Source: Hypanus sabinus
Taxonomy: Eukaryota
DNA: 64,000 nt
Direction of reading: 5' to 3'
NCBI RefSeq assembly: GCF_030144855.1
Contig: NC_082724.1
Location: 41,168,001 to 41,232,000, forward strand
A program made the translations under genes and the position numbers. Of this stretch, positions 8,205 to 59,057 are shown in pieces. The notes below the pieces were generated by a model that was given only the letters and a program-made list of their open reading frames with translations, searched no databases and was not told the origin of the DNA. The number at the start of each line of letters is the position of its first letter. Within the stretch, counting starts at the first letter, position 1.

Positions 8205-8515
8205 CAACACACACAAAATGCTGGTGGAACACAGCAGGCCAGGCAGCATCTATAGGAAGAAGCACTGCCCACCTTTCCTCACTGGCAGAAGCTGCGCAGT
8301 AGTGAATTTAAAAACGCAAACAAGAGGAAATCTGCAGATGCTGGAAATTAAAACAACACACACAAAAAATTCACTACTGCGAATTACTAAGGGTTTCGGC
8401 CCGAAATGTCGACAGTGCTTCTTCCTCTCGATGCTGCCTGGCCTGCTGTGTTCCACCAGCATTCTGTGTGTGTGTTCCTTGAAATTCCAGCATCTGCAGA
8501 TTTCCTCGTGTTTGT
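8205..8515. mobile_element. Penelope-derived fold-back element, rearranged copy
   Basis: Inverted arms 8205-8267 / 8413-8477, 38-nt tail 8478-8515, TSD gagggtagatgttag (8190-8204) / gaggatagatgttag (8516-8530). Confidence 0.88.
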
Positions 8516-11004
8516 GAGGATAGATGTTAGTTCTGGATTTTGGGTTCCCTTTCTCAAAGGAGTTGTGACCGGGATAGTAAGTTATATTTAAAGTTCAGCA
8601 GAGGAGTTATTATGTCTAATAATCAGTATTCTCCGTATAAATGGAAAATCATCTGAAATTCATTCAAAAATATTTATGGGTCTTCAAGGCAAGTAGTCTA
8701 TCACTTTATGTGTAATATGGAAGTAATTATCACATTGCCAATAATCTTATTCAGAATAGCTACCAATACACATTTCTCTTTTACTTTGCTCCCTTCCCTC
8801 ACACATTATAATCAGCTCTACTATGAATTGAAGAATTTACCACTTTTACAGAGGCACAATTCAAATTACTCAGTTAAGTTAGAAACAGTCTTTCTGTAAA
8901 TATAACACTGACTCTATTAACATTATTCTTGCTGATGAGCAAGTAATGGTAACATGCAACAGAAATTGCAACCTGATTTTATTTCCAGACTTTGTTGCCT
9001 TTGATTAATTGAAATTAGTTCTAATAGTCAAGGAAATTATTCCTTATTAACATCATTTTAGCAGCAAAATACTTGGCTAGTAAAGTATATTACATAAACT
9101 AATCAGGGAAATATGTGCTTGAGGCAGTGTGCACAGGGCACCAAATGGATTGCTGATTGAAGCTTGAATTTAGATTATGACGACCATAAAATAGATATAA
9201 AAGTAAGTTAATTGATTATAAAAATACAGTACATTTATGGACTGCTCTGTTAGTTTAGTGAGGCTACAACTAAACAAAATGATGGTGTGCAAATGGAAAG
9301 ACGAGGTCACATTTGTCTTGTCTTATTCCTGTTGGAGGAGTCACCAGGATGCCCTAACCATGGGCCATACCTAATGGGCCAGTCATTGAAGCATGCCAGT
9401 GTGAGACAATGTTTAAATGGAATAAGGATAACAAAGCAGAATAGTTTGCTGAGCAATTCCTATAATTTGGGAAATTTGCAGCTGATCTCAATACCCAACA
9501 GTGGATTGAATATGATTAGGGATAATCAGGGATGCATGAAAGGCAGAAAGTGTTGGAGCAGGGTTATCTAAGAGAATTATAGATAATGAAAACTTCAGAA
9601 GGATTACAGAAGTTATTAGAACTATTTGAAAGGAAGAATAACAACTTCAAGTTCAAATCAGTGGAGATGAGAAAGCTTGAGTTGATAAGTGAATGGGTCA
9701 ATTTAGGCAAAGGGGAAACAGCGTTTTCTTTTATCAAGTACATGGAGGCTGAAGGCAGAAAATCAGCTTAGACTGTTTACATGCATGTCCACAACTTGCA
9801 ATTCTAATGCACCTGTGGGTCAGGTCTCCACACAATTTCATAGCAATTACAATTTTCTCATATTACCTCACACTTCAGCACAACATCCTGAAAACAACGC
9901 TTGGAATGGAAATTATTGGGAAAGTTAAGATGAGAATTTTCAACAATTGCATATATGGGTTAAAATTAAGATGTCCACACTTGAAGCCACTTTGAAAGAT
10001 CTTAGCAAGCAAAAGTCTAATTTAATTTAAGTTTATACATCAAATAAAAATGTTCATCTATTTTTTGTGTTACTTTTCCAGCCTTTTCTTGTGTCCCTCA
10101 GTTCAAAGGAATGACCCAGAGACACTTGTAGTCCAATATATGAGCCTGCACTGTTTTGGTAACTGCAGGTCTATAAATAGGATCCCCTCTTTTCAGAGTT
10201 GCACCTTCATAATGTTATTAGGATTTAAGGATTTGCCGTAAGTCAACTTCGCTTTGTACACTGATCACTGCCTGCATTCAAGTCCACCCGATTATTTTGC
10301 ATGCAAGTTCTTAAAAAATGTGGGTTCTATTACTAGGTTTTAGTTCTCTGATCAACTTTCTTACTGCCCAATGCCCAAGCAATTGCTTTCCACCTGAGTG
10401 AAAAAGAAATAAGTTTACATATCTTACTTCCTATCACTACCGTGGTGGATGTCCTTGGATCACATAGCGGGAAGAGACTGAATATTTTCATATTCATGGC
10501 ATCCATTACAATTATATATCTAACTGCAATGTGCAAGTTACTAGCAAAATAATTTGCATGCATTAAATCTCTTTTGCAACTTCAGCCACCTGACTAAGTT
10601 TTCATCGAAAATTAAAAGGCTAAATTTGAAATACAAATCGGCTTTAGTTTACATGTCATGTAAAATACATGTCATTAAATGGTCCAGAGCAAAATGGGAA
10701 AAAATGATCTGCAAGCTCTTATCCACATCATCATGGATTGGAAAAATGTCAACATTTCTTCACTACCCTTGATTTAATATCTTGGATGTCCCTGTGCTGC
10801 ATCACCATACCAGTACCACCTGCACACAGCTAGCAGCAGAAACATGAAGTTTCCTCAAAACTAGAAATAACAACTATTCTAATATCTAAGAACAAAGTGA
10901 ATAATATTGATAGAAATAATCTGGAGGAAGCTGAGAGGAAAATATACAAAATGATGACTTTTGGATGAGTTGAACTGTAACATCCTTTGGTGAGGGAGGT
11001 GAAA

Positions 11005-11740
11005 TAAGACCAAAGAATTGATTGTGAATTTCAGGAAAGGGGCGTCAGGAGAATACATACCGTTTCTCTTTAAGGGATCAGTGTAGAAATAGTAAGCAGA
11101 TCATGAGTGTCAACATAGCTAAAGATCTATCCTGGGCCCAATATTTTGATGCAATTATGAAGATGGTACACCAGTGGCTATACTTCATTTGTAGCTTGAG
11201 GAGATTTGGTATGCCACCAAAGAATCTAATGACTTTCTACAGATATATCGTGGAAAGCATTCTATCTGATGGCATCACAGTCTGGTATGGAGGGGCCAAT
11301 GCACAGAATCAGTAAAAGCTGCAAAGTGTTGTAAACTCAGGCAGCTCCATTATGGGCACTGGTCTCCCCATCCATGAGGACATCTTCAAAAGATGATGAC
11401 TCAAGAACGCAACATCCATTATTAATGACCCCTACAACCCAGGATATGGCCTTTTGTAATTATTACCATCAGGGAGGACATACAAGAGCTTGAAAACACA
11501 CACTCAATGTTTTAAGAACAGCTTCTTCCCTTCCACCATCAGATATCTGAAGAGACAATGAATGCATTAACACTACCTCATTATTTTAATCACTTTTTGT
11601 ATTACTTATTTCATTGGATTTTAATATTTTTTATATTTCTTCTTATAACTTATCATATATTTTATGTACTACCATTTACTGTTGCCACAGAACAACACAT
11701 TTCATGACGTGTCAGTGTGAATAAATTTGATTCTGATTCA
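11005..11740 (+). mobile_element. Rex1/Babar-type LINE 3' end
   Basis: ORF 11103-11315 (HQWLYFICSLRRFGM...FYRYIVESILSDGITVWYG); aataaa followed by a (gattct)n tail. Confidence 0.85.
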
Positions 11741-12149
11741 GAGGAGGAAGGACACAAAAATAAAATAAAAAGAGATGAGTAAACTCTTCATATGGGCTAT
11801 TTATCTGGAATCTGGTCTGAATTGGTCTGCAGATGTGGTGGAGGCAAGATCTACCATAATGTTTGAGAGGGAAGTGGATAAAAATAAAATATAGAGGAGG
11901 ACAATGTGCAAAGTTAAAGTGAAAGGGCTAGTGAGGGAATCAGTGGTTTGGCTCGAGTACAGAGGCAGCATGGGCATAATAGCTGACAGGTCTCCTGCAC
12001 TTGAACCATTCCATGACTCTGACAGATCTGACTTTCACTTTATCTCCTTTGCCGGTGCAAACCTATTGCCACTCAATTAAGTTTCCAAGAGCAGGCTTTA
12101 CTGGGACAACAATCAGGAAGCTGCCATTGCAAAATGAACTGAAATTGGA

Positions 12150-13820
12150 TACGCACAGAGCAAAGACAGGGTAGTTTATGTTGGAAGTTTTACCTTGCAG
12201 ATACCTTAAAAAACCTGATAATTTCATTTTTAAAATTTATGGGTGGGTATTCTGCAGCAATATATCTGTAAATCAATGAGGGACAAGCTATATTATATTA
12301 ACAGATTAGTAAATAGAATTGTAGCCAAAAAGTGTATGGACATTCACATAGACACAAGAGGTACTGGAGATGCTGGAAATCTAGAGGAATACACATAATG
12401 TGCCAGAGAAGCTCAGCAGGTCAGTCAGCATCTATGGAAGGGAATAAACAGTTGATGTTTTAGGCCGAAACATTTCATCAGACGAAGGGCCATGGCATGA
12501 AACATCAACTGTTTATTCCTGTCCATAGATGTTACCAGATTCGCTGAATTCCTCCAGCACATTGAATGGCAAACATAACATTCTCAATAGCATGTTAGCT
12601 TCTAAAGGGAAAGTCTTCGACTAGATACCAAGATTTTGTAGTTGGGTAAGGTCGATTACCAAATGATGAGGCAGAAGCTGTCATGATAAAGTGGGAAGAC
12701 CCTTGAGTGGTTAAAATGGCTGTACATCAGTGGGACTTATTCACATTTGTGACTTAGGCCAACTCCTTATCCCTGAAAGCAAGACCCCACTTCAGTGGAT
12801 AACAGAGAGGCTAAAGCATAATAAAACTACAGAAAGAATGCAAAAAAAAAGTCTCAAACGGATCCTGGTGTCAAGGAAAGATACAGGAACAGTAAAAGTT
12901 GATAAACCAGATATTAGAAATAACAAAAAAAGGCCTCTAAAACATATTTGGCAATATGTCTAAATCAATATATTTAAAATTACTAGGAGAATTAAGGAGT
13001 CAGGAGCAATGGAGGGTATTTAAAATAGACAACAGTGATATTGGAAATGAATATAAGGAAATGATGAATATGCTCAATAACAGCCATGTTTCAATATTCA
13101 CAATAAAGAAGTATGACACTCTAGTAATCCTTATGAAACCATTCCTTTAGATTGTCACTCAACTACTTAACAAAGGTGAAGGGGTGGCAATAGTGGTTAC
13201 ATGGAATATTGAGAAGTTAGTTAGCATCTGCTGTCAGGAAATGTGTGAGGATTTAATTAAAGGCAAAATGACTGAAGACATATTTTCAGTTAATCACAGA
13301 GAGCTGGCATGTATTTGAAAAGGGTAGGTCATGCCTGCTGAAGCTGATTGAATTCTTTGAGAAGGTGACAGTGGTAGGGCAGGTAGATGGTCTATTGATG
13401 TCATTTAAATGCACTTCCAAGAAGCATTTGATCGTATTCATTAGACACAGTAAGCTCGTGGAATTGAAGCTGAATCATTTAGATGATGAGCAAACTTACT
13501 AAATAGTAAGTGGAGGTACTCAGCAGCACATTCCAAAGTGACGCATAATATCACACATGAATCTCTGTTGGAGACACAGCTATTAAATGTTACATAGCAA
13601 AGCTTGACACAAAGTTTGCAGCGTTACAGTATATTTAATATAGATGCATTAGATCAATCAAAAATTAAAAGAATGAATGAGGATAAAACTGTAGCTAACT
13701 GTAATAGATTTCAGAGCAAACAAATGTAATGTTATCTACTTTGAAAATGAAATGTTTAAAATGGTGTATTTTGCAAGTACTAGCAGGCTAGAAGCAGTAA
13801 AGATTCAAAGGACTTTGTGA
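12150..13820 (+). mobile_element. Old fragmented CR1 ORF2
   Basis: Remnants such as ggtaggtcatgcctgctgaagctgattgaattctttgag (GRSCL..LIEFFE) and cacttccaagaagcatttgat (F..AFD); interrupted by 12351-12564. Confidence 0.65.
12351..12564. mobile_element. Penelope-derived fold-back element (older copy)
   Basis: Inverted arms (catctatgga...gaataaacagttgatgttt / aaacatcaactgtttattc...tccatagatg) joined at ttcatcagacgaag; both hammerhead cores mutated. Confidence 0.8.
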
Positions 13821-13849
13821 TTTCACATGCTTCAGAGCTTTCCAGGAAT

Positions 13850-16335: not shown

Positions 16336-18112
16336 CAATTATATTTATCATCTGATGAGGAACTTTCATCCAATGAGTGTCACCAACCAAGATCACCAAT
16401 TCCACAGGATGTTTAATGAATGAACAATTACCACAGCATTGCAATCAACTGTTTGAAAAACACTTAACACAGGATTGGCAAAATATGCAAAAGATCAGGT
16501 GATTAAAAAATCTTGGAGGGAAAAATACTGTAAGGAAATATTTATAAAATTGAAATAACTAAATCAAGACGGCTTAGTTTCTTACTCCAATACAGTTAAT
16601 TATGGTTCTAATTTACTGAAGGCTATCAGTTTCCAATGCAGGCTCAGTATATCTCACCCTATATTCAACTGCAGAAGATAAATTAGATCATCCCTTTTAT
16701 CTGTGTTATAAAAAAGATACTGCAAATCAATGACACTGAATTAACAGTAAAGGGATTTAAGCCTGCACAAAGTTTATTGGTGTGAAATTAAGATTAAAAA
16801 CATAGTTCTTAGTTTTTAACATAACACCTTCCTATTTGACAGTAAATAACTGTTTTACAACATATAAGTAAAAAATAAGAATTGAAATGTGTCCTCAAAA
16901 TGTCATGATAAATTTAGCTTATATTCAGCTGTAAGGAGATCAATTGGGAAGAATTTACAATTGAGTGGTATGCAAGCTTCTTAGATATTCAAGAAATGAG
17001 GTGATTACTTTGTATTAACTTTATATTCTAATAACTTAGAACTTCATATTTTTCATTATAAGTGAATTGCATGAGACCTTTTTCCCTCTTGACAAAAAAA
17101 TCAAAAAATATGACTACCTACCACTTTGTCAGCTGAGGAATTTTTATTTGAGTGGCTCATTGAAAGACATGGATATGTAGTATTCTGCAGGTTTTGCTAA
17201 CTACTGTTCACACATTTTTTTATTATTCATTCGTGACAGCTGAGGCATGACTTTAATACTGGCACAAGCCCCATGAATCTCTTGTCTTTAAGTCAAATAT
17301 GGATAAGGACATCTGCTCTTTACAACTGGCCATCTCCTTCACCTGATCAATTAACACTCCTCTGTGTTGGACTCCACTTGGCTACAGTGAGAAAATTAGC
17401 ATTTAGGGCAAGATACCTTCAATGACCATCATTAAATCACACTCATAATGACTGAGAGCTCCATTCCTGAATGTTTCTGTTTCTCCTGTGATTAGGAAAG
17501 GTAGCAAGTTAAGTAATGTAAAAATAAAAATATTTAACCTCTCACTCAGCAATCCATATGCTGCAGTAGCATTTAACCTTTTCTACTTTGCCTTGAGTTT
17601 ATCACAGAAAACCCTATCGTTCTCTTCAGATGCTTCCTGGCTGGAGAACATATTCAGCATTCTCCAGTTCAGTCACTATGAGTATGATTTGACAATGGTC
17701 AATGAAGTTAGTTTGTCAGATGCAGCCTCAGAATGTCTCATCCACTTTCAGAATAAAAACTGTGAATGTGATACTTGTTCTGAAGAACAATGCTGTTGAC
17801 ACAAGACGTTGTTCAGCAGAAGAAGAGCAATGCCGCTGGTACAACGAGGGGTGATTGATAAATTCATGGCCTAAGGTAGAAGGAGATGAGTTACAGCTCA
17901 CGTTACATGCACATGCAGTTCAACTCTTTGAGTGAAAATGCAGAAAGTTTGAAGTTAATAACTCTTCTCCTTCTACCTGAGGACACAAACTTATCAATCA
18001 CCCCTGCTGTGGACCATTTCTGGAGGTCCAAGATGCTGATTTCTACAAAGAAGGTATCTGTATGCTCTATGACCACTGGACTAAGTGTGTAAATGTAGGA
18101 AAAATAAATGTG

Positions 18113-18330
18113 ACACGAGTGAATCTGCAGATGCTGGAAATAAATAAAAACACAAAATGCTGGCAGAACTCAGCAGGCCAGACAGCATCTATAGGAGGAG
18201 GTAGTGACAACGTTTCAGGCCAAAACCCTTCATCGCTCCTGACAAAGAGTTTCGGCCTGTAACGTTGTCACTATCTCCTCCCATAGATGCAGTCTGGCCT
18301 GCTGAGTTCTGCCAGCATTTCGTGTTTTTT
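18113..18330. mobile_element. Penelope-derived fold-back element
   Basis: Inverted arms of about 90 bp centred near 18235; about 33-nt tail on the left; perfect 14-bp TSD gaaaaataaatgtg (18099-18112 / 18331-18344). Confidence 0.92.
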
Positions 18331-18984
18331 GAAAAATAAATGTGCTAGGTTTTCTAAGATTGACTCCATCTACCTTGGGCCATTAACTTACCAATCACCC
18401 CTCGTGTTTGTTCTTTCCAGGAAATATTGTGAGTGAGTTGTTTTAAAGACGGTGTACTAAAGCAAAGTGCACTTGCACCTGAAAAACCCCATATAAAAAA
18501 GTAGAAAATTAAGGATAAAAGCAAATAGTGTGAATGTTTCAGGACTTGCCTTATCCTAAGATGTGTGCTTTATCTAGTCACTGCAATGATCCACAAGAAC
18601 AAGAAGGGACATAATGAACAAAGGATATTTACAGTTCTTAATGATAAAATCTAGTAATGCCTGAATACAGATTTATTATTTTTTTATCAGAGGTTGCTTA
18701 ACAATTAACAATGTGGAGCCTTGCAACTTAAAAGAAAACAGTACAGCTGCACTGACAATGGCTTGGAATAAGAGAAGAACTCTCAGTATTTCCTGCACAT
18801 TTACCTGCCTGATTACAGCCTCTGTAAACCGAAAGTTCAATGTCCAAATCCGAAAGTTGCAATTAGTGGTTCTTTGCTCTTTCAGAATTGGTACAATCTT
18901 TGAAGGAGCAAAAACCATACAAGTACTGATCTGGATTCATTGAATAGGATGCAACTTACTTTTTAAACTGATTAAACAAGAATA

Positions 18985-19680
18985 TAAGAGACAAAAGCAG
19001 AAGCAGATCATTTCACCTTCTTGTGCCTCCTTCACCATTGAAGATAAGGCTAACAGTTCACCTTGGCTTCAATTGCTGTATTAATGCATAAACTTGATTC
19101 TCTTAATAATGATCTATCCTGAGAAATAAATTCAATGCAAATCCTCCATAGCCTTTTCAAGGAAGTATTTCAAAGTTTCGCTGTCCTCTCAAGTTAAGTA
19201 AAAAAAAAATCATCTCATCTCATTCCTGAATTATAAGCTTCTTATTTTAAGACTGGGATCGCTTGTCCAGCACAACCTTAGTCAATGGTAAGATAATCCC
19301 TGCATCTAACCTGTCAATAAGATGACCACAGGCATACTTTGATTAGCCTTCCCTCAACGGACATCCTCTCTCTCAAAAATCAATCTGATGCACTCCCTCC
19401 ATCACAAATATATTCTTCTTCAAGTCTGAAGACTAAACTTGTAATAATGTCTCAGGACCCTATATAATTTCATAAAAATGACTTTAGTCCTTTGTTCAAT
19501 TTTTATCAATAAAACACACAATTTTCTTTCTTAGTGGCTTGCTGCACATGTATAAATCACTTCTGGCAATTAGAATACAAGGACACCCAGGTGCCTGCCA
19601 ATTTCATATGATTTACAATTACCCTACTTCCCCAGTTTTTTACTGCAGTGGATGATTTCACACATATTATTTCTCCCATT
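18985..19680 (-). mobile_element. Old CR1 3' fragment
   Basis: Decayed similarity to the CR1 3' end at 4607-5450. Confidence 0.6.
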
Positions 19681-19746
19681 GGATAATTCAAATGGAAGGT
19701 GAAGTTATTCTCACCACTCCCTTGAAAAAGGTGATCTATTTCTTAG

Positions 19747-19982
19747 ATACACAAATAAAATGCTGGAAGAACTCAACAGGTCAGGCAGCATCTATGGAAA
19801 AGAGTATAGTTAACGTTTTAAGCTGAGATCTTTCATCAGGATTCATCAGTCCTGATGAAGGGTCTTAGCCCGAAATGTCGATTATACTCTTTTCCATAGA
19901 TGCTGTTTGGCCTGTTGAGTTCCTCCAGCATTTTGTGTGCGTGGCTTGGATTTCCAGCATCTGCAGATTTTTTCTTGTTTGG
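19747..19982. mobile_element. Penelope-derived fold-back element with hammerhead motifs on both strands
   Basis: Inverted arms centred near 19845; 40-nt tail on the right; perfect 14-bp TSD gatctatttcttag (19733-19746 / 19983-19996). Confidence 0.93.
19847..19884 (+). ncRNA. Minimal type-I hammerhead ribozyme motif
   Basis: CAGUC-CUGAUGA(19852-19858)-A-GGG UCUUAG CCC-GAAA(19872-19875)-U-GUC^GAUUA; stem I AGUC/GAUU; no helix III; predicted cleavage after 19879. Confidence 0.75.
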
Positions 19983-20273
19983 GATCTATTTCTTAGGGGT
20001 GTATTTAAGTTAAAAGCATAGCTCTCTTTTTTTTGTTTAACTTTAAGTTAAGCAGCTGGTAAACTCAATTGCAGTTTGACATTTCTTGCCATTTCTGATT
20101 TTGTAATCATGAACCTTAATTCCTTTGAAATAATTATGTCAAAATACTATGGTTTTAACAAAAAAAGTATATTCTTCATTTGTTTGTATTTTAGCTTCTG
20201 TCTTAAATTCCACCTGTATATCCCAAAGTTTATTCACTTTCTTAAAACACTGAAAAACTAAATTCATTTTATT

Positions 20274-20410
20274 GACACAAGAGGTTCTTTAGGTGCTGGA
20301 AATCTCGAGCAATACACATTGTGTTTTGGAGGAGCTCAACAGATCAGGTAGATATATAGATGGGAATAAGCAGTCAACGTTTCAGGCCAAGACCCTTCAT
20401 CAGGGCTGAT
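20274..20410 (-). mobile_element. Single-arm Penelope terminus (hammerhead + arm + tail)
   Basis: Homologous to the arms of the fold-back family; possible decayed TSD aattcattttatt / cattcagtttttt. Confidence 0.8.
20371..20408 (-). ncRNA. Minimal type-I hammerhead ribozyme motif
   Basis: Minus strand reads CAGCC-CUGAUGA-AGG GUCUUGG CCU-GAAA-C-GUU^GACUG; core intact; stem I 4/5 pairs; palindromic AACGUU in place of helix III. Confidence 0.75.
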
Positions 20411-21197: not shown

Positions 21198-21403
21198 CAA
21201 ACATGAAAATCTGCAAATGTTGAAAATCCAAGCAACACACACAAAATGCTAAAGGAACTCAACAGCCCAGGCAGCATCTATGGGAAAAAAAAAGTACAGT
21301 TGATGTTTCGGTATGAGACCCTTCAGCAGGACAGCTGCATTCTGAGTTCCCCCAGAATTTTGTGTGTTGTCAAGATTTCCAACATCTGGAGAATTTCCTG
21401 TGC
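21197..21403. mobile_element. Penelope terminus pair (full minus arm plus partial plus arm)
   Basis: Tail, arm and hammerhead remnant (minus-strand core CUGCUGA...GAAA) followed by the inverted ctgagttcccccagaattttgtgtg...tail. Confidence 0.8.
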
Positions 21404-27879: not shown

Positions 27880-28640
27880 TGCAAGTGGAGATAGAGTCAC
27901 CTTTCCTCAATCAGCAGAGCTGTTCTGCAGAGTAATTATCCAAATTCATCGAAGTGCTCCTGAACAGAGATTCCTATAATGACCACGTAATGAATACCAA
28001 ATGCAATGCACAAAATTGAAAGTAAATTGCTGCTTCACCATAAAGGACTGTTTGGGTCCTCGTATTCTCAACTAGGAAAATGTAAAAGATTCCGTGGTTT
28101 CTACCCTCCGTGGTTGCATGGGGAGGTGCAATAAGAAAGGAATGGGTGTCATTGAGAATAAAAGAATGAACCAGAGAACCACAGAGAAAAGTTCCTTTTT
28201 GCTTTCTTTATTTCTCATCCAGTGACCAAAGCACAATTCGCTTCTACTCCTTCTGATTCATGTGCATTCCATCCATTTATTTGCACTGCTTTTGATGTGA
28301 TTTCTGCAATACTGGGAAAAGCAAAACACAGATCAGATAACAGCTTTTGCAGTAAAAAATACCTTAGTTGAGTACACCAGTGTGATGATAAGTTTCCCAG
28401 TTGCTGATCACTTTAATTCTCCATTTAATTTTGACCCCTGCCATCTTTTCTTTAGCATATAAAGCTATTCTAATAGCGCCAAATACAAACTCATTGAACA
28501 GCATTACACCTTCCAACCAGGCACATCTAGCCTCTCTGAAAGCTGGCTGTGTCAACTAACAATGTCATTTACACTGATGCCGCCTCACCTGCTGGGTGTG
28601 TCCAGCATTCTCTTTTATTTCTCATTTCAACTACTGCAGT
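27880..28640. mobile_element. Ancient inverted Penelope remnant
   Basis: Minus-strand piece (aaaggactgtttgggtcc, complement of the GPKQSF region seen near 20873) followed by a plus-strand GIY-YIG-like piece (ccagttgctgatcactttaattct = PVADHFNS) and an arm remnant at 28575-28640. Confidence 0.55.
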
Positions 28641-31600
28641 GTATTGTATCTCACAGCTCTAGTTGTTTAATTCACAGGTCTATATTCATCTTCAGTTCAC
28701 AGTTACTCCAGGGAAACATTTGTGACAAAGCTTCATCATCTTCTCTCAGCCAACATAAACATCAGTTAAGTAATTGAGACTGTTGTTTTTTTGTCCTATC
28801 ACAAGCATTTTCTTTGTTATCTCTATCCCATCCTCTGTAAGTTAAAACATTGATTGGAAATGTTATCTCTCCTGCTATTTCCCCGGATGCTGCCTGTCTT
28901 GGTGAATCATTCCACAAAAACTCTTATGTATTTTCGTCAATCCACAACCGTTACAATGACACAGGCTATTTTTTCTATAGTTGTGTGTTAATAGAACAGT
29001 GAAACACCATGAACACATATCTTCCAGGAAATATTGTCCATTGAAAGACTTTTAATTAATTGAAATAATGTTAACACTACATTGTGGTGAACTGTGTGCA
29101 GGTAATTATTTGACATCAAGGCAATGCAGATGGGCTGATGGAATTGGGGCAGAGGTGGCAAATGATGTTTAACGGCAAGAAAAGCAATATGTTACCTTTT
29201 GGTTTGATGAATAAGAAGAGACAACATAAACAAAAAAATTCTAAAACAGGTTCAATAACATTTGTAGGGTTATTGGGAAAGGGACAATTTAATTGCTTTC
29301 ACATAGTTCCAGTACAAGCAAAAGCATTCTGAGTTTGTTATTTGGAGAAAAAAACTATGAACCTATTCCTAAATCTCTATTATTTTATTTAGTTTTATGT
29401 AAGAAATTGCACAGATATTAACCAGGTCAACCTACAGGCTCATATCTTTTCTAATGTAAGAAGGTAGCTAAAAATTATCTTCTGCTGAATGGATCAGCGA
29501 CTTGCTACAAGATAGATTCCAGAGTGATTTCTGAAGGCAGCCTCAGTGAAGGACTGTTAGTCCCAGCGGGAGGATTTAATAGCCTCTTTATTTCTGTATT
29601 TTACCTAGAAACAAAATTCAACAAAGCACACCATGGTGTAATTGAGTCTTCAGTTCTTAAGATATACTGTACAATGCAGTATTAAATATCTTCACATTAG
29701 TTAAATAGGTACCAAAAGACAACTTGATTTAACTTCAGCAAGAAAGGAAAAAGGGATTGAAAATGATTGGAAATGTTTTTCATTCTAATTTACACTTCAG
29801 TGAGAACCTTAAAGAAAAAAAATCACTGCAGAAGACGTGGAGATGATAACATTTATCTAAAAAATATTTCTTATGACAAGCAGTTCTGCATCATTATGCT
29901 ACTAACTGAATGTTACATATTCATGGGCAAAATAACTTGCTTAGAAAATGAATACCCCCATGAGGTTTAGTGATAATTCAAATGAATGCACCAGCATGAA
30001 AGTTGCTTTCAGCAGGCTTGAGGTAGGATAAAGATGTTGACTGTTACAGCAAAGACTTTAATCTCATTTGTTCCTTCAACAGTCAATCAAACAGTGATCA
30101 CAAACATGTGTTTTAGTTTCCACCTCTTCCCAAACACAACAATGCTGAATTCAGCAATGGGATATGTTACATTGAATGCATGCTTGCTCTTCCTCTGCTA
30201 AGGCCTGTAAATTCCTCATCTATAGGACGACACATACACTTACAGAAAACTCTGAGATGTGAACTGAAAGATGACAAGCCTCTTTCTTAAATCTCCATTT
30301 CCCATATGTTTAAAATCAGGCAAACATCTGCTTTAAAGTAACCACTGTACAAGTTCTGCCAGTAAAGAAAACAGAATAAGCAAAACCATACATCAAAACC
30401 TACACTTGAAATATCATTAATTGCTAATGTTCTCCTGCCTTTGTATCTATTTCTGAGGATGCTCTTGGCACACTGAATATATCATGTTGGATTCAATGTG
30501 ATTCTTTCAGAAACCCTGCACTAGAAATTAGTTTCACAGATAGCATGTGTGTGTGCATGAAGACCTCATGAGGCAGCAGATCTAAAGCTTTGCAGTCCAG
30601 GTATCCAGTTCCATTAACTGCTAAACAAATGCAATGATACTAAGCTGATGGCATTAGAACCAGAAAAAGCTTGACATTTTCTGCAGGAAATTGACCTGAA
30701 ATGTGAACTCCATTTTTCTCACTGACAATATTGCTTGACTGATAAACCATGTCCAATATTTTCTGTTCTATTTTGTATAATATTACTCATTCACTCGATT
30801 CTTTAAAAAAAAACAATGACTCCGGAATAAAAGGAAATAAAATGCAAGAAAGTTAAGTTTGCTTGCATAAATGCTGTCCTCATGCAATGTACAGTTGGTT
30901 GTAGATACAAGTGCTGAAAACTATGAAACAAAAAATCTTCATGTATTGTACATGGAACAAATCATATACTATTAAAGTCAGTAGAAGTTAAAATCTTGTT
31001 ATTACCACAGTCAACTGATATAAAATGGGCAGAAGAAAATTTTCATTTTAAATTAATTACCAATGAGGAACAAGCAATCAAGTTGTTCCATGCAATTGAT
31101 TGGGCTTCTTAACTGGTTAGTGCCAACAACATTAATGTTAAAAACTACACCTACAGTATCAAGCTATCACAATAAAATGCAAAGTAGTTGTTCATGACTT
31201 ACTGTGTGCTTACAGCTGGAAATGCGCTCAGACCAGTGTTAACTGGGTGTTGTCTGGGGCCCACACTGACAATTCAGACTTCTTATGGCTATAAAATCAT
31301 TTAATCTAGATCTCCATACCAATCTTACTGACAGAGACCATAACAGTTTGGTATTACGACCCTGAGCTGATCAATAAAAAAAAATGGTATATTAAGTAGA
31401 TGGCCCAAAATGTCAAGTTAATTCACAGTATGCATGAGCACTGATCTGTGGAAACAGTAGGGCTTGCTATAAGAGCAAATTATTCTAATCAGGGATGTTC
31501 TTAGCCGTAAAATATTTTTATACTTTTCTGATATAATGAACTGAGCTCCAGATGATTTTAATGCAAAACAAACTGCACCAAAATAAATATATTTTCTGGT

Positions 31601-37923: not shown

Positions 37924-37993
37924 ATTTAATAGAAGTCCAAGCACAGGAACAACAAATTTAAAATATTAAAACCAAAAATAAATTAACAGCATC

Positions 37994-38180
37994 ACACACA
38001 AAATGCTCAATGAACTTTGTAGGTCAGGCAGCATCTCTGGAAGGAAATAAACAATCAATATTTTGATCAAGGTCCTCAGTGTGGGGGAGGGTGGTGGTCA
38101 CAAGCTGGCAGGTAATAGGTGAGTCCAGGTAAGAGAGGGAAGGTAGGTGAGTGGAGGAATGATGTGAGAGGCAGTAGAGA
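37994..38180 (-). mobile_element. Penelope 3' terminus and purine-rich 3'UTR fragment
   Basis: cacacaaaatgctc...gtcaggcagcatct arm followed by a GA-rich tract; probable partner arm near 38750-38850. Confidence 0.65.
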
Positions 38181-41010: not shown

Positions 41011-41029
41011 AATGATTAGAGTATTAATA

Positions 41030-42650: not shown

Positions 42651-43240
42651 ATGGGTAACTACTGAGAACACAAGAAACCAGAGATGTGTAATCTAAAGCA
42701 CCAAACAATTTCCTAGGGCTTGGGTTCTTAACTGGAGGATCATGAATAGATTCCAGGGGATCCATGAATTTGGATGGGAACAAATTTACATCTTGATTTT
42801 CACTAAACTCTAACTGAAATGTCACATTTCCTTCAATTATGAATATAGGCAACAAACCACAGCAGTATTAGCAGTACATGTGACTGTCACCATAGAGATC
42901 ACAGGTATTCTCACATTAGAATTGTTATAAATATATCAAAATATTTTTAACTGCACATTCATCACTACTTTGAAATTACCAGCGATATTAGATCTGTTGC
43001 TAGATCAAATGTAATCACTGTCTCCCTGTCTGCTGACATTCGTGCGATGTAGCTGGTCAAATATTCAGCAGCCCTGCACCTTCAGTGAAGTTGCATGTTA
43101 TCACATTTGTGATCCAGGCATTTGCATTGCTCTTCATTATCCCTATCTATACTTGTTTGTAGAACAATAAAAAGAAGGAGCTGAGTTGTTTTTATTGTTT
43201 GCTAAAGTTTTGTTTGAACTGGACAGTTCAAACGAGAATT

Positions 43241-44949: not shown

Positions 44950-45379
44950 AACATAAAATTTAAGTTTAACGCCTAAATTTTAAATATATAGTATTAATAT
45001 TTAATGCATTTTTAAAGAAGCACATATATTAACATATCACATTAAAAATCAATATTTATGTTTCATTTGTAATGCTATTTTATTTTATATATTTAAATAT
45101 ATTATTCTGAGACTGGACCCAAAAGGGTATGGTATAAAAAAACGTTAAGAGCCCCTATGCTTGAGGAATTCAGGAGCTGAGCAATATCTGTGGGAGGAAA
45201 GGAACTCGATGCCTTTGAATCAAAATTTTGCATCACAACTCCTCAATCCATTGAGTTCCTACAGCCGATTATTTTGTTGAAACGGGAAACTATTGAGTTG
45301 TTAGGCAAATGTCAGTGTGTTTTATTTGGATTTTGGAAAGCATTCATTATGCATAAGAGGTTGGGTGACAAAGTTAGAT

Positions 45380-48310: not shown

Positions 48311-49207
48311 GAAAAATAGACCATCTGGAAAACTCAAAGCCTCCTCTGTGATCAGTTTGCCTTACTTGTTTGGTCTCTCGTTAGTATTTGCTAATCTTTC
48401 TAAATCCCCATGATTGAGCACAGAGCATTGTCGCAAGAAAGCAGCCATTATCAGGAACTCCCACCACCCAGATCATGCTCTCTCCTCTCTGCTGGCATCA
48501 GGAAGCAGCAATGTTCACATATAACAATTAAAATAATCTCTCTGCACTCACCAGCTTTCTTCCTCATAATCAAGTACAAATGTAATGTCTCCAAGTGCCT
48601 TGATTATTATATAAAATAGATGAAAGCGATCAAGTACTGAGCACAGTAGAACTGCATTCAAAACAACATCTGCTTACCAGAAGCCTATTAAATGCCCACA
48701 CCCATTAACATTTGCCTCCTACCATTGATCCAATTATCAATCCAGCTCATCTTTTTTCTCTTGTTTTTATCTAAAATAAACATAAACTTCCATTTAACTC
48801 CTCAAAAGTATAATTACCATACAGACATAAATATGCTTTAAATTCATTCTGACCATATTTGATTAAGTATTATTTAGGGAAGCCTGGAATAATCTGTCCC
48901 ACTGTTGTTTTCCAGCAATTCTTCCATTCCTAATGTTAGGGTGATCTTCCTATATTCTGTATATTCTACTCAACCTTAGTAAACAACATAAACAATGTTT
49001 CTATCCTTTGGGGTGGATGGGGTGTCCAGAGACGGTAGCATCTCTGGGGAAGGGGCTTGTTGTATCCATTCTGAGGAGCTCACTCATCTAGAATTCCCAC
49101 TGGGCACTCAACTCTCACCTGTGGCTCCAAGTAACTACTTGCATGCAACAGTGGCCACTTCCGATACACCACTTCAACAAGCGGGCTAAGTTAGGTGATA
49201 GTAGCCA

Positions 49208-50575
49208 GTGGCCTCAGGCCCCGGTGAGATAGGTACAATTAATGGAAAATTAGTAGGTAAATTAATGGAAAGTATTTTTAGAGATGTGGTGGGTAAATTA
49301 ATGGAAAGTATTCTTAGAAATAGTATTTATAATTATCTGGATAGACAGGATCTGATTAGGAGTAGCCAGCATGGATTTGTGCGTGGAAGGTCATGTTTGA
49401 CAAACCTTATTGAATTTTTTGAAGAAGTTACGAGGAATGTTGACAAGGGTAAGGCAGTGGATGTAGTCTATATGGACTTCAGCAAAGCCTTTGACAAAGT
49501 TCCACATGGAAGGTTAGTTAAGAAGGTTCAGTCGTTAGGTATTAATGCTGGAGTAATAAAATGGATTCAACAGTGGCTCGATGGGAGATGCCAGAGAGTA
49601 GTGGTGGATAATTGTTTATCAGGATGGAGGCCGGTGACTAGCGGGGTGCCTCAGGGAACTATTTTGGGCCCAATGTTATTTGTAATATACATAAATGATC
49701 TGGATGATGGGGTGGTAAATTGGATTAGTAAGTATGCCGATGATACTAAGGTAGGAGGTGTTGTGGATAATGAGGTGGGTTTTCAAAGCTTGCAGGGAGA
49801 TTTATGCCAGTTAGAAGAATGGGCTGAACATTGGCAGATTGAGTTTAATGCTGAGAAGTGTGAGGTTCTACATTTTGGCAGGAATAATCCAAATAGAACA
49901 TACAGGGTAAATGGTAGGGCATTGAGGAGTGCAGTGGAACAGAGAGATCTAGGAATAACAGTGCATAGTTCCCTGAAGGTGGAGTCTCATGTAGATAGGG
50001 TGGTGAAGAAGGCTTTTGGAATGCTGGCCTTTATAAATCAAAGCATTGAGTACAGAAGTTGGAATGTAATGTTAAAATTGTACAAGGCATTGGTAAGGCC
50101 AAATTTAGAATATTGTGTGCAGTTCTGGTCACCGAATTATAGGAAAGACATCAATAAATTAGAGAGAGTGCAGAGACGATTTACTAGGTTGTTACCTGGG
50201 TTTCAGCACTTAAGTTACAGAGAATGGTTGAACAAGTTAGGTCTCTATTCATTGGAGCGTAGAAGGTTGAGGGGGGATTTGATCGAGATATTTAAAATTT
50301 TGAGAGGGATAGATAGAGTTGACGTGAATAGGCTGTTTCCATTGAGAGTAAGGGAGGTTCAAATGAGAGGACAAGATTTGAGAGTTAGGGGGCAGAAGTT
50401 TAAGGGAAACACGAGGGGGTATTTCTTTACTCAGAGAGTGATAGCTGTGTGGAATGAACTTCCTGTAGAAGTAGTAGAGGCCAGTTCAGTTGTGTCAGTT
50501 AAGGTAAAATTGGATAGGTATATGGACAGGAAAGGAGTGGAGAGTTATGGGCTGAGTGTGAGTAGGTGGGACTAG
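49208..50575 (+). CDS. CR1 ORF2 reverse-transcriptase domain (455 aa open frame, no endonuclease; probably not a host gene)
   Basis: QHGFVRGRSCLTNL, YMDFSKAFDKVPH, SGVPQGTILGP, KYADDTK, LVRPNLEYC; the GTG start is borrowed from the flanking element. Confidence 0.6.
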   Translation: MASGPGEIGTINGKLVGKLMESIFRDVVGKLMESILRNSIYNYLDRQDLIRSSQHGFVRGRSCLTNLIEFFEEVTRNVDKGKAVDVVYMDFSKAFDKVPHGRLVKKVQSLGINAGVIKWIQQWLDGRCQRVVVDNCLSGWRPVTSGVPQGTILGPMLFVIYINDLDDGVVNWISKYADDTKVGGVVDNEVGFQSLQGDLCQLEEWAEHWQIEFNAEKCEVLHFGRNNPNRTYRVNGRALRSAVEQRDLGITVHSSLKVESHVDRVVKKAFGMLAFINQSIEYRSWNVMLKLYKALVRPNLEYCVQFWSPNYRKDINKLERVQRRFTRLLPGFQHLSYREWLNKLGLYSLERRRLRGDLIEIFKILRGIDRVDVNRLFPLRVREVQMRGQDLRVRGQKFKGNTRGYFFTQRVIAVWNELPVEVVEASSVVSVKVKLDRYMDRKGVESYGLSVSRWD

Positions 50576-55734: not shown

Positions 55735-56865
55735 TCCTTACATATCTGGAGAAGGGGGATGCTTACAAGAGAGTGCTGTTTTTGAGTACAGTTCAGCATT
55801 CAACACCATAATTCCCCCCTGGCTTCACAAGAAACTCAGAGACCTCAGCCTTCACCCTGCCTTGTGTAGCTGGATTCTGGACTTCCCGTCAAATCACTGG
55901 CAAGTACTAAGAGTGGGCTCCCTCACTACTGTCCCTCTGACCTTCAACACAGGTGCCCCTCAGGACTGTGTACCAAGCCCCCTGCTTTACCCTCTGTATA
56001 TCCATGACTGTGTCGCCACCCACAGCTCTAATCTGCTAATTAAATTTGCTGATGACACTACACTGATTGGCCTGATCTCAAATAATAATGAGGCAGCCTA
56101 CAGCAAAGAAATGTTTGACTTCTTTGACAAAGAAGTCTTTGACACAGTGGTGTCAAGAAAACCTCTCCCTCAATGTTGCAAAAACAAAGGAGCTGGTTGT
56201 GGACTACGGGCAGAATGGAGACAGGCTAGCCTCTATTGACATCAATGGATCTAGGGTTGAGAGTGTGTACAGCTTTCAATTCCTTGGCATAAACAACACC
56301 AAGGAATTCACATTGTCTGTACATACAGGCTGTGTGGTGAAAAAGGCACAACAGCACCTCTTTCACCTCAGATGCTTGAAGTTTAGTGTGAGCTCCCAAA
56401 TCCTAAAAACTTTCTATAGGGGCACAATTGAGAGCATCTTGACTGGCTGCATCTCTGCCTGGTAGAGGAACTGTACTTCCCTCCATCGCAGGACTCTGCA
56501 GAGAGTGGTGCGGACATCCCAGCACATCTGTAGATGTGAACTTTTCACTACTCAGAACATTTACAAAGACAGGTGTGTAAAAAAGGATCATTAGCTACAT
56601 GAATCACCCCAACCACAAACTATTCCAGCTGCTACCATTGCAGCATAAAAGCCAGGAGCAACAGGCTCCAGGACAACTTCTTTTATCAGGCCATCAGAAC
56701 GCTCAACTCACACTGATACAACTGTATTTCTATGTTATTTTGACTATTTATTATAAATTACTATGAATTGCACATTGCATATTTAGCCGGAGACTTAATG
56801 TGAAGATTTTTACTCCTCATGTACTTGAAAGATGTAAATGATTAAGTCTATTCAATTCATTCAAT
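55735..56865 (+). mobile_element. Rex1/Babar-type LINE RT and 3' end
   Basis: [49 protein letters not shown]; (attca)n tail. Confidence 0.92.
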
Positions 56866-57329: not shown

Positions 57330-57675
57330 TCATCATGGTGTCGTAGAGGGTTCCAGCACAGAAGTAGGCCCATCAGCCCACTAAGTCCATGCTAATCAAT
57401 CATCCATTTATACCCATTTGCTGTTAATCACCTTTTATTCTCCCAACATTCTCACAAACTTCTCCAAAATGCTACTTCTCACTGACACACGAGGAAGAAT
57501 TCACAGTGGCAATTAACCTATCAACTTGCACTTCACTGAGATGTAGGACAAAATTATTATGCTCACAGAAAGGATGTTAAAACATCACACAGACAGCATC
57601 TGGAGCCAGGATTGAACATAGGACTCTTGTACTGTGAGGAAGTAGTTCTACGACCAGTGCCATTCTGCCACCCCA
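57330..57675 (-). mobile_element. V-SINE (HE1-like)
   Basis: Reverse B box ggattgaac near 57609-57617, V-domain-like cacacagacagca, CR1-derived tail (cagcacagaagtaggcccatcagccca). Confidence 0.68.
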
Positions 57676-58838
57676 TGTCTCTATCTGCCAACTCAGAAAT
57701 GTGAATGTGGTTTCCATGACTTGCTTCCAGTAATAGCTTGTGCTCCAATGCTAGAGTTCCCATGCAGTTTAAAAAGGAGTAAGAACTTTTATGATCTGCC
57801 AAATGCTTACAACAAGAACTCAACTAGAGAATTCTGTAACACCAACAGCCTCAGCTAAGAGTTTGGCAATTTAACAAATCATTTATCAGTCTCTGCTGGT
57901 CCCACTGCCATTAGTTTTTCTGCTGGTCATATGTGAAAGTAAGATAATTCTCCATTGAACAGTAGTGTGCAAAACTTCCATAAAATCTAACTCATCCCAA
58001 AATTGTTGGTCTAAATATGTCTCTGGCATTACCATGGATTACATACGTTGCTTAATGCTACAAAATATTCTTAAATTCTCTGTCAGATCTGAAAAAGTTT
58101 TTTCGCAGTTAATTAAAGTTAAACTATCAAAGAAAGTTAACAATATTCTACCGAAACTTTTACAAGTATTTTTCAGATGTCAGTTTATTTGCTGCTTTGA
58201 ATTTTTGAAATATTTAATTTGTTTGAAATAGTTTCAAAGTGTTTTCAGTTTTCTTTTCACCTTTTAATTTTAATCAATTTGCTGATGAACGAAAAATTAA
58301 TTAAAATATTCAGTGCCATTTGAAATACTGTATCTAAGAAATGCTTCTTCTGATGGACAAAGCTCTGTCACAGGAATCATGGCAAATTTCGGCAAATTTC
58401 TGCTGAGATGTTTGTCTGAGACAGGCTGTATTTTTTAACAAGCACCCCTGTTGTTAATAAGCTATTTTTGAGCGAAAGATAATCATCAGGTGAGGATTAC
58501 TGTGGTAGCAATTCACAGTTTAACAGTTTTTAATATCCCACATCAAATTAGTGATCTGTGTAATCTTTACTTACAGAACCTGACTGTTAATCAGACACAT
58601 CATTTTGAGGTGCCTCCTAAAGTTCAGCCGTTAGGGTTTGTGAATTAAGATACTGTTCTTTTTTCTGTCACTTTGCACATATTAACTAAATAATAATTTT
58701 GCCAATGTGTTCACTGCAGCACCATCAGTTTAGGATAACTCCCAAGACTAGGTAGCCTGAAATTAGATTAGATATTGATAAATAATGAAATTGGCCATAT
58801 CAGTTTAAGAAGTGCTTAAATTTTCTTGCAGGTGTGGA

Positions 58839-59057
58839 CAACACACACAAAATGCTGGAGGAACTCAGCAAGCCAGGCAGCATCTAGGAAAAGAGGACAG
58901 TCGAAGTTTCAAAACAAAAAGCCTTCAGCAGGACACAGTTTTTGTCCCAAAACTTCGACTGTTACTGTTTTCCAGGATGCTGCCTGGCTTGCTGAGTTCC
59001 TCCAGGATTTTGTGTGTGATCCTTAGATTTCCAGCATCTGCAGATTTTCTCTTGTTT
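58839..59057. mobile_element. Penelope-derived fold-back element
   Basis: Inverted arms centred near 58935; 36-nt right tail; degenerate TSD gcaggtgtgga / acaaatgtaga (four transitions). Confidence 0.88.

What the first reader, a model, noticed from the sequence alone, without database searches (positions are those of the whole stretch)
8205..59057. Dispersed family of short fold-back elements: inverted Penelope arms meeting at hammerhead motifs, with 14-15 bp TSDs
Seen: five two-armed copies (8205-8515, 12351-12564, 18113-18330, 19747-19982, 58839-59057) plus single or partial arms (20274, 21197, 37994, 42668+45158). Each is a ~200-nt hairpin with no coding capacity, built from arms of hammerhead (CUGANGA-stem II-GAAA-CGUC) plus about 70 nt. 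Three copies have clean TSDs (14/14, 14/14, 14/15), so each hairpin inserted as one unit. Established: Penelope-like elements carry minimal hammerheads in their pseudo-LTRs and often integrate with an inverted pseudo-LTR. Inference: these are either extreme 5'-truncated Penelope insertions or a self-propagating non-autonomous palindrome. A palindrome would present a ribozyme, and make long dsRNA, whichever strand is transcribed. About one copy per 7-8 kb here suggests a very high genome-wide number.
Basis: partly seen in the sequence, partly recalled or inferred. Interest (0 to 1): 0.85.

Follow-up and report, generated by a model that had tools for sequence, protein, structure and literature searches.

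The report
Minimal fold-back Penelope retrotransposon insertions
These short DNA hairpins are real, but they are the smallest form of a structure already described for Penelope-like retrotransposons (an inverted plus a direct terminal repeat made in one insertion event), so they are abundant old transposon debris and not a new kind of element.

Summary
The window has six two-armed inverted units, the five reported plus 21198-21402. It also has three single arms and two weak relatives. All are built from one 134-nt module: a loop-less minimal hammerhead, a presumptive ORF start, a GT-rich site and a 38-nt tail. Three units have significant 14-15 bp target-site duplications (TSDs). The two arms of a unit share private variants, so each unit arose in one event.

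The anatomy matches the published Penelope-like element (PLE) insertion signature: an inverted pseudo-LTR (pLTR) next to a direct pLTR, an optional 30-40 bp tail at one end, TSDs, and short palindromes at the head-to-head junction. It also fits the in vitro finding that a PLE protein nicks and extends both DNA strands from two internal reverse-transcription (RT) start sites.

All six junctions differ and no unit is a copy of another. Contigs from four related species show head-to-head, head-to-tail and tail-to-tail joints, and none of them dominates. A self-propagating palindrome is therefore not supported. In a fold-back transcript the single sense ribozyme would be locked in a long duplex.

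This scan noted the same fold-back insertions in at least 17 other stretches of this genome. Those notes are unchecked.

Verdict: a new, very abundant member of a known kind. Interest is modest.

The parts
8205..8515 (.). Two-armed unit c8. The minus arm covers 8205-8316 (body to the GT-rich site, no tail). A more-than-unit extension, 8317-8367, is the tail plus GT-rich site of a preceding tandem unit. The plus arm covers 8366-8515 and has the tail. A 15-nt linker is present in both arms (8296-8310 and 8369-8383).
8190..8204 (.). Left TSD of c8. Its partner is 8516-8530 (14/15 match).
12351..12564 (.). Two-armed unit c12. The minus arm 12352-12481 has the tail. The plus arm 12481-12564 ends at the GT-rich site. 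The junction lies inside the CUGAUGA box. No TSD was detected.
18113..18330 (.). Two-armed unit c18. The minus arm 18113-18234 has the tail. The plus arm 18237-18330 has none. The unit is inserted in another high-copy repeat.
18099..18112 (.). Left TSD of c18. Its partner is 18331-18344 (14/14 match).
19747..19982 (.). Two-armed unit c19. The minus arm 19747-19841 has no tail. The plus arm 19849-19982 has the tail and an intact hammerhead core. The junction holds an extra copy of the box, forming the palindrome 19842-19859.
19733..19746 (.). Left TSD of c19. Its partner is 19983-19996 (14/14 match).
20274..20405 (-). Single arm c20 with tail and an intact-core hammerhead. Its 5' end lies a few nt upstream of the box.
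21198..21402 (.). Sixth two-armed unit c21, with unequal arms. The minus arm 21198-21333 is complete and has the tail. The plus arm 21337-21402 covers only consensus 63-130 and also has the tail.
37987..38071 (-). Single tailless arm c38. Its 5' end is near the GAAA / cleavage-site region.
42668..42718 (-). 3' part (GT-rich site plus tail) of an arm split by a 2.4-kb insertion.
45157..45235 (-). 5' part (hammerhead region to consensus 84) of the same split arm.
58841..59057 (.). Two-armed unit c58. The minus arm 58841-58935 is complete at its 5' end and has no tail. The plus arm 58940-59057 starts inside helix II and has the tail. No TSD was detected.
28551..28650 (+). Old, 66%-identical relative of the arm (probably another PLE family). 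A second lies at 28855-28934.

Best explanation
Each unit is the product of one retrotransposition event by a Penelope-like element (PLE) reverse transcriptase / GIY-YIG endonuclease. The template was only the terminal module of the element: minimal hammerhead, ORF start, RT start sites and tail. The endonuclease made nicks staggered by 14-15 bp. cDNA of the module was laid down in both orientations, 3' ends outward and 5' ends meeting in the middle. Repair then left an inverted pLTR next to a direct pLTR between TSDs. The arm without a tail started at the internal GT-rich RT start site (consensus about 96). The arm with a tail started about 38 nt further 3'. Shown here: the architecture, the TSDs, the shared origin of partner arms, the two alternative 3' ends, the variable junctions and the age. 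Inferred: that the enzyme is a PLE protein, and that both target strands primed synthesis (my preferred route, about 0.5) as opposed to self-priming or snap-back of one cDNA (about 0.3). I also infer that many arms stop just 5' of helix I because that point is the 5' end of the pLTR transcript, which is reverse-transcribed from the internal start sites of its own 5' pLTR. The copies are old and mostly have dead ribozymes. Any present effect, such as dsRNA or small RNAs from intronic hairpins, would be a by-product.
For: Architecture. Six head-to-head units are built from one 134-nt module.

One event per unit. Three units are bracketed by 14-15 bp TSDs, seen in <=0.03% of 3000 random position pairs. 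In 9 of 10 cases an arm's nearest relative is its partner. Partner arms share private variants, at 69-87% identity against a mean of 67% between units.

Tail. Five of six units carry the 38-nt tail on exactly one arm. Tailless arms all stop at consensus 96 +/- 2. In contigs of four related species, copies run into unlike AT/T-rich DNA at the same two points. In run X1 about 1100 contigs do so just after 19939 and about 2400 at 19980/19981.

Literature match. Typical PLE insertions have an inverted 5'-truncated copy or pLTR adjacent to the direct one, a 30-40 bp tail often at only one end, TSDs and palindromes at the inverted junction. [quoted passage not shown] Here the module has an ATG plus about 14 codons, or 27 with the tail. 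The purified Anolis PLE protein cleaves and extends both strands and starts RT at two internal sites whose interval is the tail (PMC11167929). Loop-less minimal hammerheads are a PLE pLTR feature, and pairs on opposite strands 100-700 bp apart were noted (PMC4209133).

Junctions. They differ in all six units and carry small overlaps or an extra box copy.

Other joints. Relatives also show tandem and tail-to-tail joints, which is the 'complex tandem/inverted' PLE pattern. The c8 minus arm is longer than one unit.

Age. Contigs from all four related species run from unique DNA into the c19 and c20 arms, so those insertions predate the split of these species.
Against: No PLE RT or GIY-YIG coding sequence lies in this window. 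The RT ORFs present hit only the general RVT_1 family and look LINE-like to me by motif. The link to a PLE enzyme therefore rests on structural signature, the literature and unchecked notes from other windows. Three of the six units have no detectable TSD. Ten of 15 arm 5' ends fall within about 10 nt of the 5' edge of helix I, which is not what random 5' truncation of a multi-kb RNA gives. A discrete short template is needed and I could only infer its origin. Dual-strand priming and self-priming cannot be told apart with these data. The hammerhead helices show register-specific pairing (66% against 22-47% when slid) but no covariation beyond shuffles in the 10 decayed copies.
Confidence: 0.8

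Rival explanations
1. The hairpin is itself a non-autonomous element. It is transcribed as a fold-back RNA and copied as a whole by a PLE reverse transcriptase, so the palindrome replicates as a unit.
For: Whole units are TSD-flanked. The architecture is uniform: one arm with a tail and one without in 5 of 6 units. The 3' arm holds the internal RT start sites, so a fold-back RNA could in principle be primed.
Against: All six junctions differ. No unit resembles another more than its own partner arm. In relatives no head-to-head joint type stands out: 1-6 contigs each, summed depth about 9-110 against a unique depth of about 8-17. Short-read graphs under-assemble palindromes, so this last point is weak. 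RT would also have to melt a stem of about 95 bp. One-tail asymmetry is a published property of ordinary PLE insertions, and here it is not significantly above chance (my estimate P about 0.1, n = 6).
Confidence: 0.06
2. The template is a dedicated short non-autonomous RNA, either a retrozyme-like tandem or circular hammerhead RNA or a SINE-like solo-pLTR transcript. It would be mobilised in trans by PLE enzymes, and would not be a truncated autonomous PLE RNA. The fold-back still forms at integration.
For: Arm 5' ends cluster just 5' of helix I. The c8 minus arm runs tail-linker-hammerhead-body, implying a tandem template with a period of about 166 nt. Relatives show head-to-tail joints: tail end to consensus 3, GT-rich site plus TG to consensus 1, and units starting about 3 nt after the cleavage site. 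Vertebrate non-LTR retrozymes are reported as pLTR derivatives, and one chondrichthyan was included (preprint 10.64898/2026.07.22.740005).
Against: Unchecked notes from other windows of this genome describe a size series of fold-back insertions up to about 1.5 kb that include GIY-YIG coding sequence. That points to truncation of autonomous RNA. No tandem array lies in this window. Internal RT initiation on the 5' pLTR of a full-length RNA would give the same discrete 5' end. This rival overlaps the best explanation and differs only in the source of the template.
Confidence: 0.25
3. The units are twin-priming inversions of the 3' end of a LINE or SINE family and have nothing to do with PLEs.
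For: L1-type target-primed reverse transcription also gives TSDs of about 15 bp, AT-rich targets and inverted 5'-truncated copies (established knowledge). LINE-like RT ORFs are in the window.
Against: The module starts with a loop-less minimal hammerhead, which is specific to PLE pLTRs. It has the optional 38-nt tail with two discrete 3' ends. It has no poly(A) or microsatellite tail. Unchecked notes place the same hammerhead directly after GIY-YIG fragments elsewhere in this genome.
Confidence: 0.04
4. The units are DNA-level fold-back or MITE-type transposons.
For: They have terminal inverted repeats and flanking direct repeats.
Against: The ends are not symmetric, because the tail sits on one side only. 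The TSD of 14-15 bp is longer than those of cut-and-paste superfamilies (established knowledge). Single arms, tandem joints and 5' truncations of the same module exist.
Confidence: 0.01

Closest known systems
Canonical Penelope/Poseidon-type PLE insertion structure (inverted pLTR + direct pLTRs + optional tail; Arkhipova et al. 2013 PMC3846280; Craig et al. 2021 PMC8557442)
   Same: A head-to-head inverted pLTR sits next to a direct pLTR. A 30-40 bp tail is present at one end. The whole insert is flanked by a TSD. The inverted junction carries palindromes or overlaps. The hammerhead lies in the pLTR, and the pLTR contains the first codons of the ORF.
   Different: There is no ORF and no second direct pLTR between the arms: the insert is only two terminal modules of 95 and 134 nt. 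TSDs are 14-15 bp here, against 8-10 bp in the rotifer examples. Copy number is far higher, of order 1e5 by contig counts and depth in relatives (a rough figure).
PAc (Poseidon of Anolis carolinensis) in vitro integration (Frangieh et al. 2024, PMC11167929)
   Same: The protein nicks and extends both target strands. RT starts at two internal sites a few dozen nt into the ORF, and the interval between them is the tail. It prefers AT-rich targets. Hammerhead cleavage is not needed for insertion.
   Different: That work is biochemical and did not follow complete integration. Here only genomic end products are seen. The start site here is GT-rich in the sense strand, whereas PAc uses an AC-rich stem-loop.
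[quoted passage not shown]
   Same: The consensus reads CUGAUGA, one extra base, a 4-bp helix II, then GAAAC directly followed by GUC with no helix III loop. It has a palindromic ACGU and a 5-bp helix I. Pairs on opposite strands were noted in Schistosoma.
   Different: Most copies here are mutated. The pairs are only 0-30 nt apart instead of 100-700 nt.
Animal non-LTR retrozymes (Cervera and de la Pena 2020, PMC7229834; Li et al. 2026 preprint)
   Same: They are short ORF-less hammerhead repeats related to PLE pLTRs. Head-to-tail joints of the unit exist in relatives, and the c8 arm implies a tandem template.
   Different: Retrozymes are defined by tandem arrays that yield circular RNAs. These units are dispersed, inverted and TSD-flanked. 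No array or circular RNA was shown here.
L1 twin priming
   Same: It is the conceptual analogue: a second priming event on the other target strand yields an inverted 5'-truncated copy within one TSD.
   Different: The enzyme class differs. L1 inversions have a poly(A) tail and no ribozyme or optional tail.

Membership tests
Penelope-like element (EN+) insertion | Encodes, or is demonstrably derived from an element encoding, a PLE-type RT plus GIY-YIG endonuclease | tested here: inconclusive
   No PLE ORF lies in the window. The RT ORFs present hit only RVT_1 and look LINE-like to me by motif. Only unchecked notes from other windows place this hammerhead after GIY-YIG fragments.
Penelope-like element (EN+) insertion | pLTR organisation with direct and/or inverted copies, the inverted copy head-to-head at the 5' side | tested here: met
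   Six head-to-head units. Tandem and inverted joints occur in relatives.
Penelope-like element (EN+) insertion | Optional 30-40 bp tail at one end, corresponding to two alternative 3' ends | tested here: met
   A 38-nt tail sits on one arm in 5 of 6 units. Two discrete 3' ends are seen in about 1100 and about 2400 contigs of run X1.
Penelope-like element (EN+) insertion | TSD flanking the whole composite insert | tested here: met
   Three of six units have 14-15 bp TSDs, seen in <=0.03% of 3000 random position pairs. The other three have none detectable.
Minimal (dimer-type) hammerhead ribozyme | Conserved core CUGANGA ... GAAA with an NUH cleavage triplet | tested here: met
   The core is present in the family consensus and in the consensus of relatives' copies (loose ends). 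It is intact in only 2 arms of the window.
Minimal (dimer-type) hammerhead ribozyme | Helices I and II supported by pairing or covariation | tested here: inconclusive
   66% of cells are paired in register against 22-47% when slid. Helix II is 80% paired. No covariation exceeds shuffles in the 10 decayed copies.
Minimal (dimer-type) hammerhead ribozyme | No helix III loop; palindromic 15.2-16.2 that allows a dimer | tested here: met
   The consensus reads GAAAC immediately followed by GUC. Cofolding two consensus copies gives -34.9 kcal/mol against -13.3 for one. The Rfam hammerhead models do not match.
Minimal (dimer-type) hammerhead ribozyme | Self-cleavage activity | not testable with these tools
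   Only contigs were available, so RNA ends could not be read.
Non-LTR retrozyme | Tandem array of hammerhead-bearing units that gives circular RNA | tested here: not met
   No tandem array of the unit lies in the window. There is only one more-than-unit arm (c8) and a few head-to-tail joints in relatives. Circular RNA was not testable.

The most novel reading that the evidence does not exclude
These hairpins may be an in vivo record of symmetric, dual-strand target-primed reverse transcription by a dimeric PLE ribonucleoprotein. The two nicks would have a fixed stagger of 14-15 bp. The two RT start sites would be used in a coordinated way (one arm with a tail, one without). The template would be a discrete RNA of about 95-134 nt headed by the hammerhead, either a solo-pLTR transcript or a retrozyme-like unit, and not a randomly truncated element. 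With about 1e5 copies, this genome would then be a natural data set for solving the still-unknown second half of the PLE integration cycle.
Probability: 0.3. Interest if true: 0.5.

Novelty: new member of a known kind. Interest (0 to 1): 0.3.

Why it matters
The result gives a clear reading for a repeat that litters this genome, at roughly one locus per 6 kb in this window. The scan's first readers flagged it again and again: it is ordinary PLE debris, not a new ribozyme system or a new class of mobile palindrome. Annotators should expect such ORF-less double-pLTR hairpins to be mis-called as MITEs, microRNA precursors (Rfam microRNA models give sub-threshold hits purely from the hairpin shape) or novel ribozymes. 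For PLE specialists the family has some value. It offers thousands of minimal, TSD-bracketed integration products with uniform stagger, two discrete 3' ends and readable junctions. A census of them could discriminate dual-strand priming from self-priming.

Tried and rejected
- Rfam at gathering score over the whole window, and at E<=10 over 18000-21500, gave no hammerhead family. The only hits were chance microRNA-model matches caused by the hairpins.
- Two exact-pattern scans of metagenome contigs for the conserved core of the arm found nothing, so no extra copies could be fetched.
- A relaxed TSD search for the units at 12351, 21198 and 58841 and the arms at 20274 and 37994 found nothing above chance.
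- A covariation test of the hammerhead helices gave no signal beyond shuffles.
- I tried to use paralogues of the repeat that hosts the 18113 unit as an empty site. Contigs of relatives read across the site with 10 other letters between 18100 and 18329. By my reading of that joint the window copy lacks about 13-14 nt next to the left TSD. The result is therefore ambiguous and I did not use it.
- Only one other partial copy of that host repeat lies in the window.
- Depth along the arm rises 5' to 3', with the hammerhead part at about 10% of the peak. I did not use this as a truncation profile, because summed contig depth mixes conservation, related families and assembly effects.
- RNA evidence (expression, cleavage ends, small RNAs, editing) could not be obtained.
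- The PNAS 2004 paper on Penelope EN/RT is not held in the library.
- I considered and rejected two independent nested insertions per unit (refuted by shared private variants and bracketing TSDs) and DNA transposons (asymmetric ends, long TSDs).

Full report
**What is there**

The window (64 kb, 37.7% G+C, no N) holds a dispersed repeat. I reduced its unit to a 134-nt consensus. The landmarks are:
- CUGAUGA box at positions 5-11;
- one extra A, then a 4-bp helix II;
- GAAAC at position 25, directly followed by GUC, with the presumed cleavage after position 32;
- a helix I 3' strand complementary to positions 1-4 plus one base;
- an ATG at position 53;
- a GT-rich stretch at positions 84-96;
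- a 38-nt 'tail' at positions 97-134.

The repeat finder recovers the five reported inverted pairs. Profile and local-alignment searches add several more copies:
- a sixth, unequal two-armed unit at 21198-21402;
- single arms at 20274-20405 and 37987-38071;
- an arm split by a 2.4-kb insertion (42668-42718 plus 45157-45235);
- two older relatives near 28.6 and 28.9 kb.

In every unit the 3' ends of the arms point outward and the 5' ends meet in the middle.

**One event per unit**

Three units are bracketed by direct repeats of 15 nt (one mismatch), 14 nt and 14 nt. Repeats this good occurred in 0.03% or fewer of 3000 random position pairs. The other three units, and the single arms, have no TSD above chance. 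Partner arms share private substitutions. In 9 of 10 cases an arm's nearest relative in the window is its own partner. Partner identity is 69-87%, against a between-unit mean of 67% and a maximum of 78%. So both arms of a unit were copied from the same template lineage at the same time. No unit is a copy of another.

**Ends of the arms**

Tailless arms all stop at consensus 96 +/- 2. Tailed arms stop at 131-134. Five of six units have the tail on exactly one arm and one unit has it on both. With six units this asymmetry is not significant (my estimate, P about 0.1).

At the 5' side, 10 of 15 arms end within about 10 nt of the 5' edge of helix I. The others end inside helix II, near the cleavage site, or at consensus 63.

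The junctions differ in every unit. They show abutting or overlapping boxes (12351 and 18113 units) and an extra 8-10 nt copy of the box that forms the palindrome 19842-19859. The unit at 8205 has a minus arm longer than one unit. It reads GT-rich site, tail, 7 nt, a 15-nt linker, a scrambled hammerhead region, then body. The same linker heads the plus arm. This implies a tandem template with a period of about 166 nt.

**Evidence from related genomes**

Four runs of four coded organisms hold this locus as contigs, about 1.5-5% diverged in unique DNA. Contigs run from unique sequence into the arms of the 19747 and 20274 copies in all four. Those insertions therefore predate the split of these species.

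Summed depth over the arms is about 1e5 times the unique depth, and 39,000-60,000 distinct contigs per run match one 138-nt arm at 80% or better. The tool warns that this is not a copy number. I read it only as 'of order 1e5'.

Copies in these genomes run into unlike, AT/T-rich DNA at two discrete points. One is just after the GT-rich site (about 1100 contigs in run X1). The other is the tail end (about 2400 contigs).

Joints include:
- head-to-head joints with one arm ending at 19846-19850;
- tail-to-tail joints, where the GT-rich site abuts an inverted tail end;
- head-to-tail tandems, from the tail end to consensus 3 and from the GT-rich site plus TG to consensus 1;
- tandems whose second unit begins about 3 nt after the cleavage site.

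Each type is supported by only 1-10 contigs per run, and none dominates. Short-read graphs break at palindromes, so the absence of a dominant junction is only weak evidence.

**The ribozyme**

Only two arms keep an intact core. Rfam's hammerhead models do not match. I expect that for a motif without a helix III loop. In the ten hammerhead-bearing arms the proposed helices pair in register (66% against 22-47% when slid; helix II 80%), but without covariation beyond shuffles. The ribozyme call therefore rests on the consensus and on the literature, not on these decayed copies.

All units fold into hairpins of -62 to -171 kcal/mol on either strand. The consensus hammerhead folds at -13 kcal/mol alone and -35 as a dimer. 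A fold-back transcript carries one sense hammerhead of a type thought to work as a dimer, and that copy is base-paired to its antisense arm. The palindrome should silence the ribozyme, not present it.

**Comparison with what is known**

- Arkhipova et al. 2013 (PMC3846280) describe the typical Penelope insert. [quoted passage not shown] The pLTR contains the first 12 codons of the ORF (22 with the tail). Palindromes at the inverted junction are interpreted as self-priming. pLTRs alone suffice in cis.
- Craig et al. [quoted passage not shown]
- Frangieh et al. 2024 (PMC11167929) show that a purified PLE protein cleaves and extends both target strands. It starts RT at two internal sites whose interval is the tail. 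It prefers AT-rich DNA and does not need hammerhead cleavage.
- Cervera and de la Pena 2014 (PMC4209133) define the loop-less minimal hammerhead of pLTRs and note pairs on opposite strands.

The units here have all these features. The module's ATG opens 14 codons to the GT-rich site and 27 to the tail end, which parallels the rotifer pLTR. What differs is only degree. There is nothing between the two pLTRs, the stagger is a uniform 14-15 bp, and the abundance is very high.

**Mechanism, and what is inferred**

I infer that a PLE ribonucleoprotein nicked both strands 14-15 bp apart and that cDNA of the terminal module was made in both orientations. The tailless arm would start from the internal start site and the tailed arm from the distal one.

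Dual-strand priming (my preference, because it is shown in vitro) and self-priming of one cDNA (suggested by near-symmetric junctions and the extra box copy) cannot be separated here.

The clustered 5' ends call for a discrete template 5' end. My inference is a transcript that begins at the pLTR boundary and is reverse-transcribed from the start sites of its own 5' pLTR. A dedicated retrozyme-like RNA is the alternative, consistent with the tandem joints and the c8 arm.

The link to a PLE enzyme is not shown in this window. The RT ORFs present hit only RVT_1 and look LINE-like to me by motif.

**Earlier notes of this scan**

First readers flagged the same thing in at least 17 other stretches of this genome. 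Their notes include a 'size series' of fold-back insertions with 13-15 bp TSDs, a 1.5-kb fold-back with two GIY-YIG copies head-to-head inside one 14-bp TSD, and a hammerhead at the end of a GIY-YIG fragment. These are unchecked leads. If right, they support truncation of autonomous PLE RNA and supply the missing enzyme link.

**Verdict**

The 'truncated Penelope insertion' reading is supported and the 'self-propagating palindrome' reading is not. This is a new and very abundant member of a known kind, with modest interest for specialists as a natural record of PLE integration.

Noticed in passing
It contains ORFs 43860-44363 and 44373-44852. The first hits Pfam RVT_1 (E = 3e-13). So at least part of it is a LINE-type retrotransposon fragment.
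   Followed up: partly
window 49208-50575 (+): A 455-aa open reading frame has a strong RVT_1 match (E = 3e-28) and looks like a LINE reverse transcriptase. It lies just downstream of the stretch another note calls a candidate HDV-like ribozyme (49017-49201).
   Followed up: partly
window 17847-18005 and 18000-18467: The 18113 unit sits inside another high-copy repeat, whose flank depth is about 1e4-1e5 times the unique depth in relatives. That repeat has its own 47-nt inverted repeat (17847-17893 / 17959-18005). By my reading of the read-through contigs, the window copy lacks about 13-14 nt right next to the left TSD compared with paralogues in relatives.
   Followed up: partly
TSDs at 8190-8204, 18099-18112, 19733-19746: All three clear TSDs begin with GA and end with G, and are 21-40% G+C. 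This may hint at endonuclease nick-site preference. With n = 3 it was not tested.
   Followed up: no
window 18195-18280 and 19809-19882: Rfam microRNA models (mir-5681, mir-3926, mir-788) give sub-threshold hits on the hairpin centres purely because of the palindrome. This is a likely source of false microRNA calls in this genome.
   Followed up: yes
window 56088-56465 (+): An ORF inside a decayed RT region hits Pfam ALKBH8_N (E = 2e-7, 39 residues). I suspect it is a conserved LINE C-terminal motif and not a host gene.
   Followed up: no
window 19911-19940 (arm consensus 66-95): In relatives this core of the arm has 8-10 times the summed depth of the hammerhead part. It is also recognisable in the diverged copies at 28.6 and 28.9 kb. 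It may be shared by several PLE families, and might be the protein-binding / RT-start region.
   Followed up: no
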